Shown piece by piece: positions 33,118 through 41,406 of a DNA stretch of 64,000 nt. Below the pieces are notes generated by a model, which searched no databases, was not told the origin of the DNA, and saw only the letters and a program-made list of their open reading frames with translations. Where the stretch lies: positions 62,001 to 126,000 of IMG/VR virus record IMGVR_UViG_3300025309_000006; one strand, written 5' to 3'. The position numbers were made by a program, and so were the translations under genes. The stretch's first letter is position 1, and each line of letters starts with the position of its first letter.

Positions 33118-33471
33118 ATGGGATTTATTACAAATCCAAGTCCAGTTTTAGGAAACGACCCTAATAATTTACCCAAACAAATGTCTGTTACTGAGAGTGG
33201 TGTAGTGAACGTATCTGTAAATGGGAGTTTACCGAACCAAACTTTAGCAGAACAACTCACTGACGTTGATGCAGTAGTCAATGTTTTAACCTTTTCTGCA
33301 AACATAGAAGCAATTGAGATATATCACGAAGAAGCAACTTGGCAAACATTCATAGTTAACGGATTAACGATTATTGTCCCTGCTGGTGGTTATCGAACTC
33401 CTATTGCTGGTGTAGTTGGTTTAACTGTTACTATCCCTGCTATATCATGCATTGTAGGGAGGTTGGTATAA
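33118..33471 (+). CDS. Putative structural protein
   Basis: RBS AAGGAGG; coupled to the next gene. Confidence 0.55.
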   Translation: MGFITNPSPVLGNDPNNLPKQMSVTESGVVNVSVNGSLPNQTLAEQLTDVDAVVNVLTFSANIEAIEIYHEEATWQTFIVNGLTIIVPAGGYRTPIAGVVGLTVTIPAISCIVGRLV

Positions 33472-33473
33472 AA

Positions 33474-35537
33474 ATGTTTGGATATAATCCACCACCTATC
33501 GAAAGTTCTTACCCTCGTGTGTCTGGGGAAAAAATCATAAAGAAACATCGCATTCTCTTTGTTGGGCCACATCAAACGTTAGGCGCAAGCCATATGCCTT
33601 TGCCAATCGAAGCGTTCCAAGGTGGGTATTTGTGCGAAGTATGTTCGTGGGAATCACTTGTTTTTAATGCAAATGATTGGAAAAATGAAGTTGATGTTAT
33701 AGTAATAAATACTCAATCAGAATTATGTATTACTAATTTTGTAACGGGGGTTGAAATAAAAACAGCGATTAGTACAATGATGTCTGCTGGAGTAAAGTTG
33801 ATTCTTTTTTTAGGTGATGCAACTTATAATATTAGGGTTTTTGCTGCCGATGGAACATATACAAGTACTAGTTTGGCGAGTTTATTAGGTGGCCTATCGT
33901 CTGGCCCTTCAAAAAACTTTTCTGCACAAACTGGAACATTTCAACATAGTGACCCCTATCCATTTGGGACTACGGAAATATTACAATCAGGGATTATCCC
34001 TTCAACTTCTGGAAGCTTGGATCTTATCGCTAGTGATCCATTGGTTGTTTTCCCCGTTAAAGCTGTTCAGAGTGAAGTTGTTGCAAAAATGGTTGCCTAT
34101 AAACCTAATTCATTTTTCGTAGTAGCACATGGAGGTGGTTCGGGAGCAACGGCAAGTGTTCAAGCGTATTGGAAATACGTGAAAAGTAACGTACTGATAG
34201 ATATCTTGCTTGGTAAGGATAATAACGCAAGATTAGCACTAGATGCTCAAAATGGCAGGAAAATAGCAGCGTTAGGCGTTGATCTGGACGTTACTACAGA
34301 CCTTGCGGCAGCACAATCACTACATGAATCGTTTGGATCAAATATTCCCATGGAGTGGGGTCTAGTTGCTGATAATGTTACAGATGATGTAGCGGGATTT
34401 TATCGAGGACTGCCCGGTATAACGAGACTCGTATCACATACTAAATCCCACTATAACACTGTTATTACGGTTACGGATGAATTGCATACAATACCATCAA
34501 GTCAATTAGTAAGGCTTAACAGGCCTTTTAAAGCTATGTTGACATCCGTAAAAACTGTTGATGATGTAACCACGTTTACTAGAAAAACGGGGGATATAAT
34601 TAGAACGGGTTCAGACGTTGGTAAATATGTAATAAATGGAGCAACCGACATAGGATCAGTAGGGCAGTTGCTTGACGGGTATCTTAAATTTAATTCTGCA
34701 GATGTAGGCAAACAATTGAAAATCACTTATACATGCAGTGATGAAGCTGCAGAGGTTATAGGTAGTTTAAATACATTGAAGGCTAAAGGTGCATTGACCA
34801 AGTCTGTCGTGTACACGACGATGGGTGCCCATTCTGTTGAACCTTCATCACTTTTAATGGCAGAAGAAGAAGAGGTAATTATTGCTGACTATCTACCGTT
34901 TCCATCATATTCACGGGCTTGGCATACTTCTAGAACTCAGAAAAAGATGCCTTTCATGCTTGGAACTACATTGCAATCAGTGGCGACATGGAATTCTTCG
35001 AATGATTCAAGTTGGTATCAGACTACTAAAGCTGATGCGAAAGTAACATATATAACTGATGCTATTACTAGGTGTAATTCATTGGATATACCATATGTAT
35101 TCTACATGCACGATTTTCCGATATCTGAAACTGCTTTGGGTGGTGCATGGTTAGGTGCTGGATACGCTGACTGGAAGAAAGCGTCATATGAAGAAACTAA
35201 AGCATATTTGCAGGAAATGTACACTTGGGTAATTGCCCAATTAGTCGCACAAAATCCGTTCTGGATGACGAGGGGGGAATATGTTGAAAGATATTATTAC
35301 CTCAATAAATATCTTTCTTATGATATTGTAGAAGCCAATAATGGATATAAAATTTCCGTTAAAAATAATGGGAGAAAAGATATTAAGGGGATTACTCTTA
35401 GACTTCCATTCGACTCTGATCCAACCGTTGTTAGATTGCTAAATGGAGCCGATGTATTCAGTTCTTACACAAATGAAGTAAAAACTGTATGGTTTGATTT
35501 AGTGGCGGGGAGTTCTTCTGTGTTAATGGTTCACTAA
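33474..35537 (+). CDS. Polysaccharide deacetylase-like (NodB/CE4 fold) multidomain protein
   Basis: LGVDLD, LVSHTKSH, FYMHD, WMT..EY motifs; start after GGGAGG; visibly higher GC than its neighbours. Confidence 0.55.
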   Translation: MFGYNPPPIESSYPRVSGEKIIKKHRILFVGPHQTLGASHMPLPIEAFQGGYLCEVCSWESLVFNANDWKNEVDVIVINTQSELCITNFVTGVEIKTAISTMMSAGVKLILFLGDATYNIRVFAADGTYTSTSLASLLGGLSSGPSKNFSAQTGTFQHSDPYPFGTTEILQSGIIPSTSGSLDLIASDPLVVFPVKAVQSEVVAKMVAYKPNSFFVVAHGGGSGATASVQAYWKYVKSNVLIDILLGKDNNARLALDAQNGRKIAALGVDLDVTTDLAAAQSLHESFGSNIPMEWGLVADNVTDDVAGFYRGLPGITRLVSHTKSHYNTVITVTDELHTIPSSQLVRLNRPFKAMLTSVKTVDDVTTFTRKTGDIIRTGSDVGKYVINGATDIGSVGQLLDGYLKFNSADVGKQLKITYTCSDEAAEVIGSLNTLKAKGALTKSVVYTTMGAHSVEPSSLLMAEEEEVIIADYLPFPSYSRAWHTSRTQKKMPFMLGTTLQSVATWNSSNDSSWYQTTKADAKVTYITDAITRCNSLDIPYVFYMHDFPISETALGGAWLGAGYADWKKASYEETKAYLQEMYTWVIAQLVAQNPFWMTRGEYVERYYYLNKYLSYDIVEANNGYKISVKNNGRKDIKGITLRLPFDSDPTVVRLLNGADVFSSYTNEVKTVWFDLVAGSSSVLMVH

Positions 35538-35784
35538 TCTTCGCTAAAGACTGCTAAATCGAAGGTTGGTAAAAACAACTAATAATTCAAAGAGAGTGTA
35601 AACATACACTCTCTAATTTTATACTTATTTAATTATATTTATAATATAGTTAATTTTAACAACCGTTTAAAAACTTGATTCTCTAGGGTATTAAATTATT
35701 TTAAAAATTAAATAAAACATATAACAAAAAGAGGGTAAATCTACTACCCTCTCTATTTTCTATGTCTAAAAAGGAGGATTTAAT

Positions 35785-35952
35785 ATGAATGTTTATAATT
35801 GTTTTTCACAAAAATTAGCAGGGTTTCTCCTTATAAATGGATTTTCAATTACAGGTATCAAATCAGATTTAAAAAATACAGGTAGAACTATTTACTTATT
35901 TCAAAATAGTGAATATCTTCAATTGGCGATTAAAAAATATAAAACTGTTTAA
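35785..35952 (+). CDS. DUF5659-like small protein (55 aa, not in ORF track)
   Basis: MNVYNCFSQKLAGFLLINGF...TIYLFQNSEYLQLAIKKY; RBS AAGGAGG. Confidence 0.75.
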   Translation: MNVYNCFSQKLAGFLLINGFSITGIKSDLKNTGRTIYLFQNSEYLQLAIKKYKTV

Positions 35953-36485
35953 TAAAAGAAAGAAGGTCTGTTTAAAAAATGTCTAAAAGAATAAATTGGA
36001 AAGCAACAAAAACATATGATGAGTATATAGAAATGTTTAAATCTGCGTGTGAAGAACTAGGTAGGTCTATTACTCCTTCAGAATTAGAAAAGCATAAATT
36101 TGATTTACCATCTGCTATATGGTTAGTTAAAAATTATCCACACGATACTATAAAAACATATGATGATTTTCTTAAGTATTTAGGGTTTGAACCAATAAAG
36201 AAGCATAATAAACATAAAAAGTACAATTTTGAAATCGCTTTTGAAGAATTTGCAAAAAGAGGACTTTATTTACCGCCACAAGAGTATACAAGTTGTGCAA
36301 TAAAAATGAAATTTATTTGTCCTCATCATCCAGATATTATTCAAAAGAAATCACTAAATAGTATAATATTTGGGAGAAAAGCAAAACACCCAGAATATAA
36401 TTACAATATGTGTAATTTATGCTTTAAAGAAAGACAAAAAGGCGAGATAAGTAATGCTTGGAAAGGAGGTTAATAAAAGTAGACA

Positions 36486-36681
36486 AATAATTATTCTTTA
36501 TAAAGATAGACTTCTTAGATTTGGTTTTGAATTAATAGAAGATTTAATTCAAATTATTACTGTATTTAGTTGCAGACTTCAAGGGAAACGAGCAAACAGA
36601 ACTAGAAAAATGATTGATGATTTAATTAAGGAAGGAGATGAGGAAATTGATAAAGGGAATCAAAGTGATGCTTGTACCTAA
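36486..36681 (+). pseudogene. tnpA: Truncated IS607 serine recombinase TnpA
   Basis: ILYKDRLLRFGFELI|EDLIQIITVFSCRLQGKR; lacks the N-terminal HTH and catalytic Ser and has an internal deletion. Confidence 0.85.
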
Positions 36682-37828
36682 CAATAAGCAGAATACATTA
36701 ATGTTTCAAAATGCTGGAGTTAAAAGATGGGCTTTCAATTGGGCATTAGGTAGAGAAAAGGAAAATTATGCTAATGGTGGTAAGTTTATTTCTGATAATG
36801 ATCTTAGGAAAGAATTAACTCAATTAAAGCAAACTAAAGAGTTTAGTTGGTTAAACAATGTTTCTAATAATGTACCTAAACAGGCAGTTAAAGATGCTTG
36901 CATTGCATATCAGAGATTCTTTAAAGGTCAAGCAAAATTCCCTAAGTTCAAAACTCGAAAGAAATCTCCTCCTAAATTTTATCAAGACAATATTAAAATT
37001 CAATTCACATCTACTCATGTTAAATTTGAAGGATTTGCTAAAAGTAAAAAGGCAAATAAGCAAAAGTTGAACTGGGTGAGATTAGCTGAACACAATAGAA
37101 TTCCTTTTGGTAAAGATGTTAAGTATATTAATCCAAGAGTGTCGTTTGATGGTTTAAATTGGTTTATTAGCGTAGGGATTGAATATCCTGATAATGTTGA
37201 AACTCCATTAAATGAAGGAATTGGCATTGATTTAGGAATTAAAGATTTAGCGATATGTTCTGATGAAAAAACTTATGGGAATATCAATAAAAATAAGAAA
37301 ATGAAACGATTAGAAAAGCAAAAGAAGCGATTACAAAGACAAGTTTCTAAGAAATATGAAGATAACCGTGATGGTTTGAAATATATTAAAACCAAGAATA
37401 TTATTAAGTTGGAACTTAAGATAAAATCAGTTCAGCATAAACTTAATGGCACTAGAGATAATTATCTCCATCAAACAACTTCTGAGATAGTGGGACGAGA
37501 ACCAAGTCATATTACTATTGAAGATTTGAACATTCAAGGAATGATGAAGAACAGAAACCTATCCAAAGCAATTCAACAACAATCTTTGTATGAATTTGGT
37601 AGACAGTTGAAGTATAAAGGATTGTGGAATCATATTGAGATTAGAATTGCTGACAGATGGTATCCAAGCTCAAAGACATGTCATGATTGTGGTAAAGTTA
37701 ACAAGTTGTTAAATTTAAATGACAGAGAATGGGTTTGTACTGGTTGTGGAAGTATTTTAGACAGGGATTATAATGCTTCATTAAATTTAAGAGATACTAA
37801 CAATTACAAGATATTTAAAGTAGTATAG
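36638..37828 (+). CDS. tnpB: RNA-guided endonuclease TnpB
   Basis: RuvC D (GIDLG), E (IEDL), D (DRDYNAS); Zn finger CHDC...CTGC. Confidence 0.92.
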   Translation: MRKLIKGIKVMLVPNNKQNTLMFQNAGVKRWAFNWALGREKENYANGGKFISDNDLRKELTQLKQTKEFSWLNNVSNNVPKQAVKDACIAYQRFFKGQAKFPKFKTRKKSPPKFYQDNIKIQFTSTHVKFEGFAKSKKANKQKLNWVRLAEHNRIPFGKDVKYINPRVSFDGLNWFISVGIEYPDNVETPLNEGIGIDLGIKDLAICSDEKTYGNINKNKKMKRLEKQKKRLQRQVSKKYEDNRDGLKYIKTKNIIKLELKIKSVQHKLNGTRDNYLHQTTSEIVGREPSHITIEDLNIQGMMKNRNLSKAIQQQSLYEFGRQLKYKGLWNHIEIRIADRWYPSSKTCHDCGKVNKLLNLNDREWVCTGCGSILDRDYNASLNLRDTNNYKIFKVV

Positions 37829-37996
37829 GTAAAAACATATACTCGGACGTTGCCGAGGAATTTAAGCTCTTGGAGTGTTAAGCAACTTGAGTAGCATTAG
37901 AAATAATGTGAAAAAGAACACGATGAATGGAAAATGAAACATAGAGTTATAACTTATTTGTTTAATTTATAACTTCTTATAAGTTTTCAGTAACGG
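37829..37996 (+). ncRNA. Putative TnpB omega-RNA scaffold (guide = flank from 37997)
   Basis: Non-coding right end after tnpB with hairpins (CTCGG-ACGTTG-CCGAG); location expected from TnpB biology. Confidence 0.65.
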
Positions 37997-38421
37997 TTAT
38001 TCTTCATTAAATATCTTATTAAGAGAACATATTGATCAATGGAAAAAAGATTCTATGATAAATTGTAACTACAAATGCGTAATAACAGGTGAAAATTTCG
38101 ATATAATTCATCATTTATATTCATTTAATAAAATAATCAGGGAAGTGATGGAGAAAACAAAATTGCCAGTTTATACAATGGTAAATAAGTATACAGATGA
38201 AGAATTAGACTTGATAAAACAAACAAATATTAAAATACATAATAAATATCCTTTAGGGGTTTGTCTGAGAAAAGATATACATAATTTATACCACCATATT
38301 TATGGGGATGACAATACACATGAACAATTTGAGGAGTTTAAAATAAGATATAATTCCGAAGAGTTTAAGAATGTAATATAATTTAATGTAAATAAAAATT
38401 TTATAAGAAGGTGAAATAAAA

Positions 38422-39276
38422 GTGAAAATATTTATTAACGCTGGTCATGGCCCAAAAGGAGTTAATAGTTCAGATTCAAATGGAATAGATCCAGGAGCAA
38501 TTGGAGCAACAGGATATAAAGAATACATAGAAACAAAAGAAATAGCAGATTTAGTATCTACAAAACTGAAATTTAATGGACTTGAAACATTAGTAATTCA
38601 AGATGGTGATTTATGGGATGTAACAAATCAGTCAAATGCTTGGAAAAGTGATTATTTTATTAGTATACACTGTAATTCGTACTCAGATTCTTCGGCAAAT
38701 GGTGTAGAAATTTTTTCATTAGCAACTACAGGGAAAGGTAGAGCACTAGCACAATCAGTACATAAAGAACTCATTCCTGCTACTGGATTGTTTGACAGAG
38801 GTTTAAAAACAGCAAATTACTATGTACTTAGGGAAACTGATTGCCCTGCTATTTTAACAGAAATTGGATTTATTTCTAATCCTAAAGAAGAAGCATTAAT
38901 GAAAGATTCTACATGGGATGATAAGGTTTCGAGTGCTATAGCAAGAGGAATTTGTAATTTTATTGGATTGGCTTATAAAGAGCAAATTGTTCAAACTATT
39001 CAGTCAACAATAAATAATAGTCAAGGAGATGATAATGTATTAAATGCTGTGCTTGGTTTCTCTCTCAATGACTTAGGTGCTTGTATGTTAGTTTCTCAGA
39101 AATTAAATAATTGTGCAATTTACTTTAGAAACACAGATAAGACTTTTAATCAAGATTGCTTAAAAGCCGATACTTTATATGTTGTAGGAGGAAGTACAGT
39201 TGGACATAAAAAAGAGAAATTGCTATCTGGTAAAGAAGCAAAAGATACATTGCAAAAAGTTGTAGATATTTTGTAA
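38422..39276 (+). CDS. Endolysin, N-acetylmuramoyl-L-alanine amidase (Amidase_3)
   Basis: IFINAGHG...E...FISIHCNS...PAILTEIGFISN; C-terminal cell-wall-binding domain (LYVVGG). Confidence 0.92.
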   Translation: MKIFINAGHGPKGVNSSDSNGIDPGAIGATGYKEYIETKEIADLVSTKLKFNGLETLVIQDGDLWDVTNQSNAWKSDYFISIHCNSYSDSSANGVEIFSLATTGKGRALAQSVHKELIPATGLFDRGLKTANYYVLRETDCPAILTEIGFISNPKEEALMKDSTWDDKVSSAIARGICNFIGLAYKEQIVQTIQSTINNSQGDDNVLNAVLGFSLNDLGACMLVSQKLNNCAIYFRNTDKTFNQDCLKADTLYVVGGSTVGHKKEKLLSGKEAKDTLQKVVDIL

Positions 39277-40459: not shown

Positions 40460-41071
40460 CTATCCATATTTTTCTTTTTGCTTTAACAGAGTTTTCTTTT
40501 TACGTTTACGATTTTGTTGCTCCTTTTTAATTTTACTATCCTTAACATTTTGTAATCGTTTCCATTTTGGTATTAAAATATATTCTTTATATTCTTCATA
40601 AGACATATTATCTTTTTCTATATTGCAATCGCCACAACAACAAACTAAATTATCTTCGTTGAATTCTCCACCTTTGCTCTTTGGAATTAAATGGTCAACA
40701 GTATCTCCTTTAACTCCACAATAATGACATTTATAATTGTCACGTTCATTAACATTGTATCTAACAATCCAACTCTCATCTTCATGATTTGGCATATAAA
40801 TTGTATCTGATTTATAAACCTGTGCTTTATCTTCATTTACTAAAGAAATGGCTTCATCAAGAGAGATTAACTTTTTGGAAATTAAATATTTACTTCTAAG
40901 AATTATGTTTTTCAAGGAGATATCTAAATTTTTTAATCCAATGTTTATACTTTTATATTCTATCATTTTATTCACAGCTTTTTCTATTTCACATTGAATA
41001 CATTGTTTTGTTTTAGAGCCTCTAAATTGAGAATCATCTTTTTCGATTTCGCATTTAGTGCATCTTCTCAT
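40460..41071 (-). CDS. HNH endonuclease
   Basis: RDNYKCHYCG...TVDHLIPKSKGG...NLVCCCGDCNIEK. Confidence 0.9.
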   Translation of the reverse strand: MRRCTKCEIEKDDSQFRGSKTKQCIQCEIEKAVNKMIEYKSINIGLKNLDISLKNIILRSKYLISKKLISLDEAISLVNEDKAQVYKSDTIYMPNHEDESWIVRYNVNERDNYKCHYCGVKGDTVDHLIPKSKGGEFNEDNLVCCCGDCNIEKDNMSYEEYKEYILIPKWKRLQNVKDSKIKKEQQNRKRKKKTLLKQKEKYG

Positions 41072-41406
41072 ATGGGGATACCTCCTTGGTAGGTGATTTT
41101 GGTTTTGTGGGTATATAAGTATTATATCGCATTTTTAATGGTTTTATAACTAGGGAGTTACAAGAGATGTGACTCTTTTTATTATGTAGAAAATTAATTT
41201 ACAAATCAAAGAACTACTTAGAGAGTAGTGAAAACTATTCTAACATTTCTTTCATTCTTATTTTATTAGTAAGAAACGGCGAAGAGAAGAGTTAGGATTT
41301 TCTTGACTTTTCTCTAAGTGATTTTTGTATATGGAAACAATTCTTCGCCGTTTTGTTTTTGTATTGAAATTACTAATAAAAATAAGAAAGAAGTGATAAA
41401 AATTAA

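What the first reader, a model, noticed from the sequence alone, without database searches (positions are those of the whole stretch)
35979..38381. RNA-guided TnpB element nested inside, and predicted to target, a homing endonuclease gene
Seen: an IS607 element inserted at the GG of the NAWKGG codons. TnpA is destroyed (N-terminus and promoter region lost, plus an internal deletion at FELI|EDL), whereas the TnpB catalytic residues and right end are intact. Established: TnpB uses the right flank as guide and the left flank as TAM. Inference: the guide TTATTCTTCATTAAATAT with TAM ~GGAGG would cut uninterrupted alleles in related phages, so RNA-guided homing has replaced HNH homing, and tnpB now depends on the upstream phage transcript.
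Basis: partly seen in the sequence, partly recalled or inferred. Interest (0 to 1): 0.65.

Follow-up and report, generated by a model that had tools for sequence, protein, structure and literature searches.

The report
Decayed TnpB transposon splitting a phage nuclease gene
A 227-kb groundwater phage carries a broken-down IS607 transposon that has lost its transposase but keeps an intact RNA-guided nuclease (TnpB) whose guide exactly matches the uninterrupted version of the gene found in neighbouring phages, so it may spread as an RNA-guided homing element, though no activity has been measured.

Summary
A 1,527-bp IS607-family remnant (window 36470-37996, + strand) sits precisely at a GG inside a YomD-like nuclease gene. 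Removing it gives a seamless 291-aa ORF.

**What is intact and what is lost**
- TnpB (396 aa) is intact.
- The RAGATH-18-type guide-RNA scaffold and the family-wide right end ...CAGTAACGG are intact.
- The left end and TnpA residues 1-118 are gone, and a further ~22-25 aa are deleted. No other TnpA exists in the phage.
- There is no group I intron, so this is not an IStron.

**Evidence on targeting**
- Related phages from the same groundwater metagenomes carry uninterrupted alleles with the same AGGAGG left flank. One matches the guide region 25/25, and four match 18/18.
- More distant alleles do not match.
- Two occupied contigs switch to other phage backgrounds 170-350 bp from the element. 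This fits co-conversion but could also be ordinary recombination or chimeric assembly.

**What remains unproven**
- Expression, TAM permissiveness and cleavage were not tested.
- The "homing endonuclease" label is unproven: Pfam is silent, and the predicted fold best matches the phage T5 SciA HNH endonuclease.
- "RNA-guided homing replaced HNH homing" and dependence on the phage transcript are plausible guesses only.

This is a new member of a known kind in an interesting natural setting.

The parts
35979..36473 (+). N-terminal fragment (164 aa plus stop) of the split YomD-like nuclease gene. It ends ...NAWKGG, then TAA supplied by the element.
36464..36469 (+). Left flank AGGAGG, the TAM-like motif. 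The GG crossover core is 36468-36469.
   Evidence: flanks of intact relatives end in GGAGG, GAGAGG or GGAGGG; published TAMs are AGGAG/GAGGG (PMC11061315)
36470..37996 (+). Decayed IS607-family element (1,527 bp). The left end is missing, TnpA is a relic, and tnpB, the guide-RNA scaffold and the right end with GG at 37995-37996 are present.
36454..36681 (+). Chimeric 75-aa ORF. Its first codons come from the host gene and the rest is the TnpA relic (homology from 36472). The 22-25-aa internal deletion lies at 36537|36538. The catalytic Ser and the HTH domain are absent.
36638..37828 (+). tnpB, 396 aa. An alternative TTG start at 36647 matches the N-termini of relatives. The RuvC D/E/D residues and the zinc finger are intact.
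   Evidence: dN/dS 0.12 against the closest relative
37829..37996 (+). Guide-RNA (omega/reRNA) scaffold. The RAGATH-18 core is 37867-37934, followed by the conserved 3' flanking motif ending ...CAGTAACGG.
37997..38016 (+). Predicted 20-nt guide, TTATTCTTCATTAAATATCT, which is also the first bases of the right half of the split gene.
37997..38381 (+). C-terminal fragment of the split gene, holding the whole HNH-type nuclease domain. An internal ATG ORF runs 38055-38381 (108 aa).
35785..35952 (+). DUF5659 gene, the conserved upstream neighbour in occupied and empty loci.
38422..39276 (+). Amidase_3 endolysin, the conserved downstream neighbour (SPbeta yomD-yomC-like synteny).

Best explanation
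An IS607-family transposon of the RAGATH-18/TnpB clade once inserted, by serine-recombinase transposition at a GG, into the YomD-like HNH-fold nuclease gene. This gene lies just upstream of the endolysin in a 227-kb groundwater phage.

The element then decayed. One deletion removed the left end and the first ~118 codons of tnpA. A second deletion, between short ELxE-coding repeats, removed ~22-25 more codons. The element can no longer transpose.

What remains is a compact cassette: an intact tnpB, an intact guide-RNA scaffold and the right end. The 3' extension of the guide RNA is the adjoining host sequence.

Inferred mechanism: the cassette is transcribed with the phage's co-oriented late/lysis genes. 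TnpB loads the guide RNA. When a related phage with the uninterrupted allele (AGGAGG followed by a matching target) co-infects the same cell, TnpB cuts that allele. Recombinational repair from the occupied genome then copies the cassette and some flanking sequence into it. This is TnpA-independent, 'non-restorative' RNA-guided homing. The occupied allele is immune because the TAM and the target are separated by the element.

Shown: the anatomy, the integrity of the parts, and the existence of matching natural targets. Inferred: expression, TAM acceptance, cleavage and homing.
For: Anatomy and precise junctions.

TnpB:
- Intact and closest to the biochemically active ISFba1 TnpB (8IAZ, E 5e-82).
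- Under purifying selection against its closest relative (85% aa identity, itself without TnpA): dN/dS 0.12.

Guide RNA:
- RAGATH-18 hit above the gathering score.
- All family-invariant scaffold columns are kept, and 15 of 32 predicted pairs show compensatory changes across relatives.
- The scaffold ends ...CAGTAACGG, as in published active systems.
- The right-end boundary is confirmed by 15 relatives whose similarity stops there.

No transposase:
- The only TnpA-like sequence in the whole phage is the relic.

Natural empty alleles, with the same DUF5659 - nuclease - amidase synteny and from the same groundwater studies:
- L080 matches the guide region 25/25.
- L070, L077, L078 and L079 match 18/18, with the first mismatch at position 19.
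- All have an identical 17-nt left flank that includes AGGAGG.
- Published data say only mismatches at positions 1-13 are critical (PMC11061315).
- Identity between occupied and empty alleles is 90-100% for ~250 bp to the left and ~400 bp to the right of the site. That is enough homology for repair.

Recombinants:
- L071 is L074-type at 195/195 informative sites, then window-type at 54/54, with the switch 170-230 bp left of the element.
- L081 is window-type at 14/14 sites, then empty-allele-type at 9/9, with the switch 295-346 bp right of the element.

The concept of TnpA-independent homing into co-infecting phages or plasmids has been proposed (PMC13565253), and TnpB-driven homing has been shown for an IS607 element (10.1101/2023.11.20.567912).
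Against: - There is no RNA data and no biochemical data.
- The TAM register is uncertain. The natural flank reads GGAGG at positions -5 to -1, whereas the published TAMs are AGGAG or GAGGG. Several TAM-contacting residues of ISFba1 do not align cleanly with this TnpB.
- Empty alleles with a perfect target persist in the same ecosystem. No empty form of this phage's own allele appears in the contigs laid.
- The background that L071 recombined with (L073/L074) has a non-matching site (AGGTGG plus seed mismatches). That recombinant is therefore better explained by ordinary recombination in a conserved stretch.
- Both recombinants come from metagenome assemblies, and L081 is only 643 bp, so they could be chimeric.
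- Nearly all occupied contigs are identical. That fits clonal descent as well as spread.
- Promoter-like hits are at chance level.
- How the left end was lost without touching a single host base is unexplained.
Confidence: 0.5

Rival explanations
1. Inert relic. The cassette is a dead transposon remnant that no longer does anything. It persists because it is recent and linked to a successful phage, and it reaches other backgrounds only through ordinary phage mosaic recombination.
For: - The left end and TnpA are lost.
- TnpA decay is common in this family (30% pseudo-TnpA in PMC11061315).
- Occupied contigs are nearly clonal.
- Perfect-target empty alleles coexist with it.
- The L071 partner background is not a guide target.
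- A second TnpB copy in the same phage is frameshifted.
Against: - TnpB has no stops or frameshifts, all catalytic residues are present, and dN/dS is 0.12.
- The guide-RNA scaffold keeps every invariant column.
- Selective survival of exactly the nuclease, scaffold and right-end module, while everything needed for transposition is deleted, is what a homing function predicts.
Confidence: 0.33
2. Phage weapon or domesticated function. TnpB with its guide RNA mainly serves the phage by cutting, and so excluding, competing related phages that carry the intact allele, or it has another host-beneficial role. Copying of the cassette would be a by-product.
For: - Matching targets exist only in competitor phages of the same habitat.
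- An intron endonuclease giving interference competition between co-infecting phages is documented (PMC11620839, listed).
- The 2026 review notes that homing and competitor killing can coincide.
Against: - There are no fitness data.
- The cost, a disrupted nuclease gene, has not been evaluated.
- This reading cannot be separated from homing with sequence data alone.
Confidence: 0.12
3. IStron-like arrangement. The insert splices out of the mRNA as a group I intron, so the nuclease gene still functions.
For: - The insertion is in the sense orientation and in frame with the host gene.
- IS607 IStrons exist in Clostridia.
Against: - No Rfam group I intron match even at E <= 1 across 35700-38500.
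- The only weak intron-like hit in the genome lies elsewhere, at G000:C1:30988-31308.
- The long left-end region where IStron introns reside is absent here.
Confidence: 0.02

Closest known systems
IS607-family TnpB with RAGATH-18-derived guide RNA (ISFba1 and relatives; Ren et al. 2024, PMC11061315; PDB 8IAZ)
   Same: - The TnpB fold and sequence match (E 5e-82), with the RuvC and zinc-finger residues present.
- The RAGATH-18 core and the 3' flanking motif end in ...CAGTAACGG.
- The guide RNA lies wholly downstream of the ORF.
- The left flank is G-rich.
   Different: - It sits in a phage genome.
- The left end and a functional TnpA are missing.
- The TAM was not measured: the natural flank is AGGAGG, against the published AGGAG/GAGGG.
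CboIStron / IS607 TnpB homing (Zedaveinyte et al., 10.1101/2023.11.20.567912)
   Same: - GG core dinucleotide at both junctions.
- The scaffold ends in CGG.
- The left-flank TAM abuts the target in the empty site, and the occupied site is protected from self-cleavage.
- TnpB cleavage of the empty site followed by recombinational re-installation has been demonstrated for that element.
   Different: - There is no group I intron and no TnpA here.
- Homing here would be 'non-restorative', into other genomes, rather than repair of an excised donor site.
Free-standing and intron-encoded phage homing endonucleases (T4 Seg/Mob, I-TevI; co-conversion and marker exclusion)
   Same: - A predicted life cycle in co-infections.
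- Occupied and empty allele polymorphism among related phages.
- Flanking tracts that travel with the element.
   Different: - Target recognition would be by RNA guide plus TAM rather than by protein.
- The element is a decayed transposon.
Phage T5 SciA HNH endonuclease (PDB 9QGV/9QGX) and SPbeta YomD
   Same: - The C-terminal domain of the split gene has the same predicted fold as SciA (Z 10.4, rmsd 3.1 A, 113 of 119 residues).
- YomD is a sequence homologue at the same position upstream of the endolysin.
   Different: - Sequence identity to SciA is only ~13%.
- The N-terminal modules differ.
- The function of the YomD family has not been tested, and nothing shows that it homes.

Membership tests
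IS607 family insertion sequence | Serine-recombinase TnpA (MerR-like HTH plus catalytic Ser domain) | tested here: not met
   Only residues 119-145 and 168-214 of a 218-aa relative survive, and the nucleophile region is absent. The relic's sequence does identify the family (phrog_6620).
IS607 family insertion sequence | Insertion at a GG core present at both junctions, with no target-site duplication and no terminal inverted repeats | tested here: met
   GG lies at 36468-36469 and at 37995-37996. Removing 36470-37996 restores a seamless ORF.
IS607 family insertion sequence | Family-specific left and right ends | tested here: inconclusive
   The right end is identical to that of 15 relatives. 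The left end of relatives (..TTAACAG..) is absent. At most ~4 nt (TTAA) could be a remnant.
TnpB / OMEGA RNA-guided nuclease | RuvC D-E-D triad and CxxC...CxxC zinc finger | tested here: met
   Alignment to 8IAZ shows GIDLG, IEDLN, DRDYNA, CHDCG and CTGCG. The Pfam domains are present.
TnpB / OMEGA RNA-guided nuclease | Cognate guide-RNA scaffold at the 3' end that runs into the flank | tested here: met
   RAGATH-18 scores 48.4 bits against a gathering score of 44.9. The flanking motifs are conserved and covary.
TnpB / OMEGA RNA-guided nuclease | The left flank carries the TAM the nuclease requires | tested here: inconclusive
   The flank is AGGAGG. Natural flanks of relatives are GGAGG, GAGAGG or GGAGGG, and published TAMs are AGGAG/GAGGG. 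There is a one-base register ambiguity.
TnpB / OMEGA RNA-guided nuclease | Guide-dependent DNA cleavage | not testable with these tools
   No RNA runs are available, and biochemistry is needed.
HNH (beta-beta-alpha-metal) endonuclease | HNH domain recognisable by profile | tested here: not met
   No Pfam hit for the fragments, for the L010 full-length homologue, or for 26 of 27 family members. A family profile finds nothing in the PDB. Only distant homologues hit: Goe17_01800 hits PF01844, and E3 gp11 hits HNH_2 at E 0.01.
HNH (beta-beta-alpha-metal) endonuclease | HNH-type fold with conserved His/Cys residues | tested here: met
   The model has pLDDT 90. The best matches are T5 SciA at Z 10.4, then Cas5-HNH, IscB and Cas9 HNH domains at Z 3-5.7. 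C32, H43, H44, H86, C94, H100 and H104 are invariant.
Homing endonuclease gene | Presence/absence polymorphism of the gene between otherwise collinear genomes, with cleavage of the gene-less allele | tested here: inconclusive
   The gene is present between DUF5659 and the amidase in every related locus retrieved and in SPbeta. No gene-less allele was seen, and cleavage is not testable here.
IStron | Group I intron spanning the element ends | tested here: not met
   No match at E <= 1. The whole-genome search finds only a distant sub-threshold hit elsewhere.

The most novel reading that the evidence does not exclude
The cassette, reduced to tnpB, the guide-RNA scaffold and the right end, is a self-sufficient RNA-guided homing element. 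It spreads among co-infecting large phages with no transposase at all. This locus and its empty alleles from the same aquifer would then be the first natural population snapshot of 'non-restorative transposon homing'. The same cut could also act as an exclusion weapon against rival phages.
Probability: 0.35. Interest if true: 0.75.

Novelty: new member of a known kind. Interest (0 to 1): 0.5.

Why it matters
TnpB is known to preserve transposons by cutting the emptied donor site. Whether TnpB cassettes can live on as RNA-guided homing elements after losing their transposase, and whether they do so in viruses, has so far been mostly theoretical.

This locus offers a concrete natural test system. 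The nuclease and guide are intact, the transposase is dead, and both matching and non-matching empty alleles occur in phages from the same habitat.

It also shows one selfish nuclease element disabling another nuclease gene in the lysis-module neighbourhood that is conserved with SPbeta-like phages.

Tried and rejected
- **Group I intron / IStron.** Rfam found nothing in 35700-38500 at E <= 1. The whole-genome search gave only a sub-threshold hit elsewhere. Rejected.
- **Public phage records.** A nucleotide search found only a 156-nt stretch of tnpB similarity in a Staphylococcus phage.
- **Exact empty-site 29-mer in IMG/VR.** No hits. Empty alleles were found only through the protein route.
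- **Left-junction 29-mer.** Found only in the twin assembly of the same phage, so there is no sign that the truncated form is a mobile unit at other sites.
- **Closest TnpB relative** (L012, Clostridium MAG, 85% aa). It shares the element only from just upstream of tnpB, so it does not explain the left junction.
- **Left-end loss by recombination at an internal GG of tnpA.** L013 has a GGT codon nearby, but the registers differ by 4 nt. Unsupported.
- **Reads.** Only DNA runs kept as contigs are available. There is no RNA and no empty-form joint. Contigs drop rare variants, so absence is not evidence.
- **L091 (P0128).** It looked like a window-type empty allele, but the contig runs into unrelated GC-rich sequence after position 747 and is uninformative.
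- **HNH by sequence.** Pfam and a family profile against the PDB found nothing for the nuclease domain. Only the fold comparison was informative.
- **SciA literature.** The paper search returned only false matches.
Full report
**Setting**

The window is G000:C1:36185-100184 of a 227,247-bp IMG/VR virus record rated 100% complete. GC content is about 29%. The region of interest lies in a co-oriented block:
- a 696-aa ORF
- a DUF5659 gene (35785-35952)
- the split gene
- an Amidase_3 endolysin (38422-39276)
- small membrane-protein ORFs

The same order, yomE/yomF-like then yomD 'endonuclease' then endolysin then holin, is seen in Bacillus phage SPbeta. Related metagenomic contigs show it too.

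- ORF 35979-36473 ends ...NAWKGG followed by TAA.
- A frame open from 37983 continues ...GYSSLNILLREHIDQWKK... to 38381.
- The left junction reads AAAGGAGG|TTAATAAAAG and the right junction reads GTAACGG|TTATTCTTC. GG is therefore present at both junctions, and by chance or microhomology the shared string extends to GGTTA.
- Joining 35979-36469 to 37997-38381 gives a 291-aa ORF with no stop.
- That ORF aligns across the junction without any gap with several homologues. They are SPbeta YomD and Geobacillus E3 gp11 (WKGGISSLN...), a 429-aa homologue in L010 (64% identity), and P0023 (283 aa, 82.6% identity, identical WKGGYSSLNILLREHIDQ).

The insertion is therefore precise to the base, as expected for IS607 transposition, which makes no target duplication.

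**The element (36470-37996)**

*TnpB*
- TnpB (36638-37828, 396 aa) carries HTH_OrfB_IS605, OrfB_IS605 and Cas12f1-like TNB domains.
- Its best solved relative is ISFba1 IS607 TnpB, PDB 8IAZ (E 5e-82).
- The RuvC motifs GIDLG, IEDLN and DRDYNA and both CxxC pairs are in place.

*Guide RNA*
- Rfam finds RAGATH-18 at 37867-37934 (48.4 bits, gathering score 44.9).
- RAGATH-18-derived RNAs are the guide RNAs of this TnpB clade (PMC11061315).
- In an alignment of the 3' UTR with 13 relatives, the window keeps every invariant column.
- 15 of 32 predicted pairs show compensatory changes across the set.

*Right end*
- The terminal ...TTATAAGTTTTCAGTAACGG is identical or nearly so in 15 relatives, and similarity stops there.
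- The published active scaffolds end the same way.
- The scaffold therefore ends at 37996, and the guide is TTATTCTTCATTAAATAT(CT).

*TnpA*
- Intact relatives encode 218-229-aa serine recombinases (L014, L036, L018, L032).
- Here only ...NKSRQIIILYKDRLLRFGFELIE and DLIQIITVFSCRLQGKRAN... survive, which correspond to residues 119-145 and 168-214 of 218.
- The HTH domain and the catalytic serine region are gone.
- About 22-25 codons are deleted between two ELxE-coding repeats.
- TnpA homology begins 2-3 nt after the GG, so the family's left end (..TTAACAG..) is missing.
- No other TnpA-like sequence exists in the phage.
- TnpA decay is common in this family (PMC11061315).

How the left end was lost without disturbing one host base is unexplained. 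I found no support for a recombinase-mediated deletion at an internal GG.

**Not an IStron, and not an artefact**

- No group I intron is detectable at the locus.
- The identical locus is in a second IMG/VR assembly.
- It is also on about 20 contigs from many groundwater samples.
- Contigs bridge both junctions at ~58x and ~340x in two runs.

**Are there targets?**

A word-based protein search with the uninterrupted L010 homologue returned 246 relatives. The closest to the rejoined protein lie in contigs with the same DUF5659 - nuclease - amidase order, from the same groundwater studies. Their DNA at the site:
- L080 has the same left flank ...GCTTGGAAAGGAGG and matches the guide region 25/25.
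- L070, L077, L078 and L079 have the same flank and match 18/18, with the first mismatch at position 19.
- More distant alleles (L010, L073/L074) read AGGTGG and have several seed mismatches, so they are not targets.

For ISFba1, only mismatches in positions 1-13 abolish activity (PMC11061315).

Occupied and empty alleles are 90-100% identical for ~250 bp to the left and ~400 bp to the right of the site, and much less alike beyond that. This would suffice for recombinational repair.

Within the occupied phage, the sequence preceding the guide is TAACGG, not AGGAGG. No other close match to the guide exists in the genome. Self-cleavage is therefore not expected.

**TAM**

- The flank AGGAGG resembles the flanks of intact relatives: CAGGAGG, AGAGAGG and TGGAGG(G).
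- The published TAMs for this clade are 5'-AGGAG (18/22) or 5'-GAGGG (4/22).
- The window's flank contains AGGAG one base out of register, the kind of ambiguity that the GG core creates and that was discussed for CboTnpB.
- I rate TAM compatibility as likely but untested.

**Signs of spread**

- L071 (4.2 kb) is L074-type at 195/195 informative sites. It is then window-type at 54/54 sites up to the insertion, and identical to the window for the next 3.1 kb. The switch lies 170-230 bp left of the element.
- L081 (643 bp) is window-type at 14/14 sites to the right of the element. It is then of the empty-allele type (L077/L070) at 9/9 sites, with the switch 295-346 bp from the element.

These look like co-conversion tracts, but there are caveats:
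- The L074 background is not a guide target.
- Phage modules recombine anyway.
- Metagenome assemblers can join co-occurring strains across identical stretches.

All other occupied contigs are essentially identical, so clonal descent is an equally good reading of the bulk of the data.

TnpB has evolved under purifying selection relative to its closest relative, which is 85% identical and also lacks TnpA (dN/dS 0.12).

**The host gene**

- Neither fragment, nor the full-length homologue in L010, nor 26 of 27 family members hits any HNH profile. A family profile finds nothing in the PDB.
- A confident model of the C-terminal fragment (pLDDT 90) matches the phage T5 SciA endonuclease over nearly its whole length: Z 10.4, rmsd 3.1 A, 113 of 119 residues.
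- It then matches HNH domains of Cas5-HNH, IscB and Cas9 at Z 3-5.7.
- Invariant Cys and His residues fit a beta-beta-alpha-metal site.

The gene therefore encodes an HNH-type nuclease. Nothing shows that it is a homing endonuclease. It occupies the same slot in every related locus retrieved. From my own knowledge, SciA is the site-specific nicking enzyme of T5.

The phage thrives with the gene split (~340x depth in one run), so the gene is dispensable there. The C-terminal fragment still contains a complete nuclease domain behind an internal ATG (38055). Whether it is made is unknown.

**Expression**

- The native promoter region is deleted along with the left end.
- All neighbouring genes point the same way.
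- The only + strand terminator-like sites lie upstream of 35760.
- Sigma-70-like hits, for example at 36340-36367, are no more frequent than in shuffled sequence.
- No RNA run holds the locus.

Read-through transcription from the phage operon is plausible but unshown.

**Comparison with what is known**

The parts belong to the described IS607/RAGATH-18 TnpB systems. TnpB-driven homing has been shown for an IS607 IStron. TnpA-independent 'non-restorative' homing into plasmids or co-infecting phages has been proposed in a 2026 review.

What this locus adds is a natural case in a large phage: a dead transposase, an intact nuclease and guide module, and both matching and non-matching empty alleles in the same ecosystem.

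**Verdict**

The anatomy is confirmed with high confidence. RNA-guided homing is the best-supported mechanism, at roughly even odds. The main rival is that the cassette is an inert hitch-hiker. I class it as a new member of a known kind, of moderate interest, and directly testable.

Noticed in passing
outside the window: G000:C1 about 118,330-119,620, minus strand (L002 1495-2786): A second IS607-type TnpB lies in the same phage. It is ~65% identical at the DNA level and is split by a frameshift into 105-aa and 301-aa ORFs. It has a strong RAGATH-18 RNA (70.5 bits) and no TnpA, and it lies between a dCMP-deaminase-like ORF and a NUDIX-like ORF.
   Followed up: partly
outside the window: G000:C1:30988-31308 (L090): A sub-threshold group I intron match (42.2 bits against a cut-off of 50, full model length) lies elsewhere in the phage genome. 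It is unrelated to the TnpB locus.
   Followed up: no
window 40460-41071, minus strand: Another cysteine-rich HNH endonuclease gene (203 aa; PF01844/HNH_5 in the precomputed annotations of related contigs) lies on the opposite strand. Differences between otherwise identical contigs (L083, L084) cluster in and next to it, at 40604-41141, which suggests a recombination hotspot.
   Followed up: no
window 33447-35537: The 696-aa ORF upstream has no Pfam or PHROG match. It sits in the most GC-rich stretch of the window (0.41 against ~0.29). Related contigs carry YomF_N-domain proteins at this position.
   Followed up: no
L073-L076 (related phage contigs): In phages with the non-target allele, different nuclease genes occupy the slot next to a phage-integrase gene, upstream of the YomD-like gene. 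The slot holds DUF7487+HNH in some contigs and GIY-YIG+NUMOD in another, which looks like a swap of homing endonuclease genes.
   Followed up: no
L091 (ERZ28563735 scaffold_70091): This contig is 96% identical to window 35614-36360 and then continues into unrelated GC-rich sequence. It is probably a chimeric assembly.
   Followed up: partly
window 36809-36964: The only nucleotide match among 50,697 public phage records is 156 nt of tnpB, 81% identical to a 'transposase' in Staphylococcus phage St14.GH. Related TnpB genes therefore occur in other Firmicutes phages.
   Followed up: no
run X5 (soil metagenome, second study): Short contigs 100% identical to parts of the locus (36052-36219, 36325-36478, 37382-37541) occur at low depth in a soil metagenome from a different study. 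The phage, or at least the cassette, is therefore not confined to one aquifer data set.
   Followed up: no
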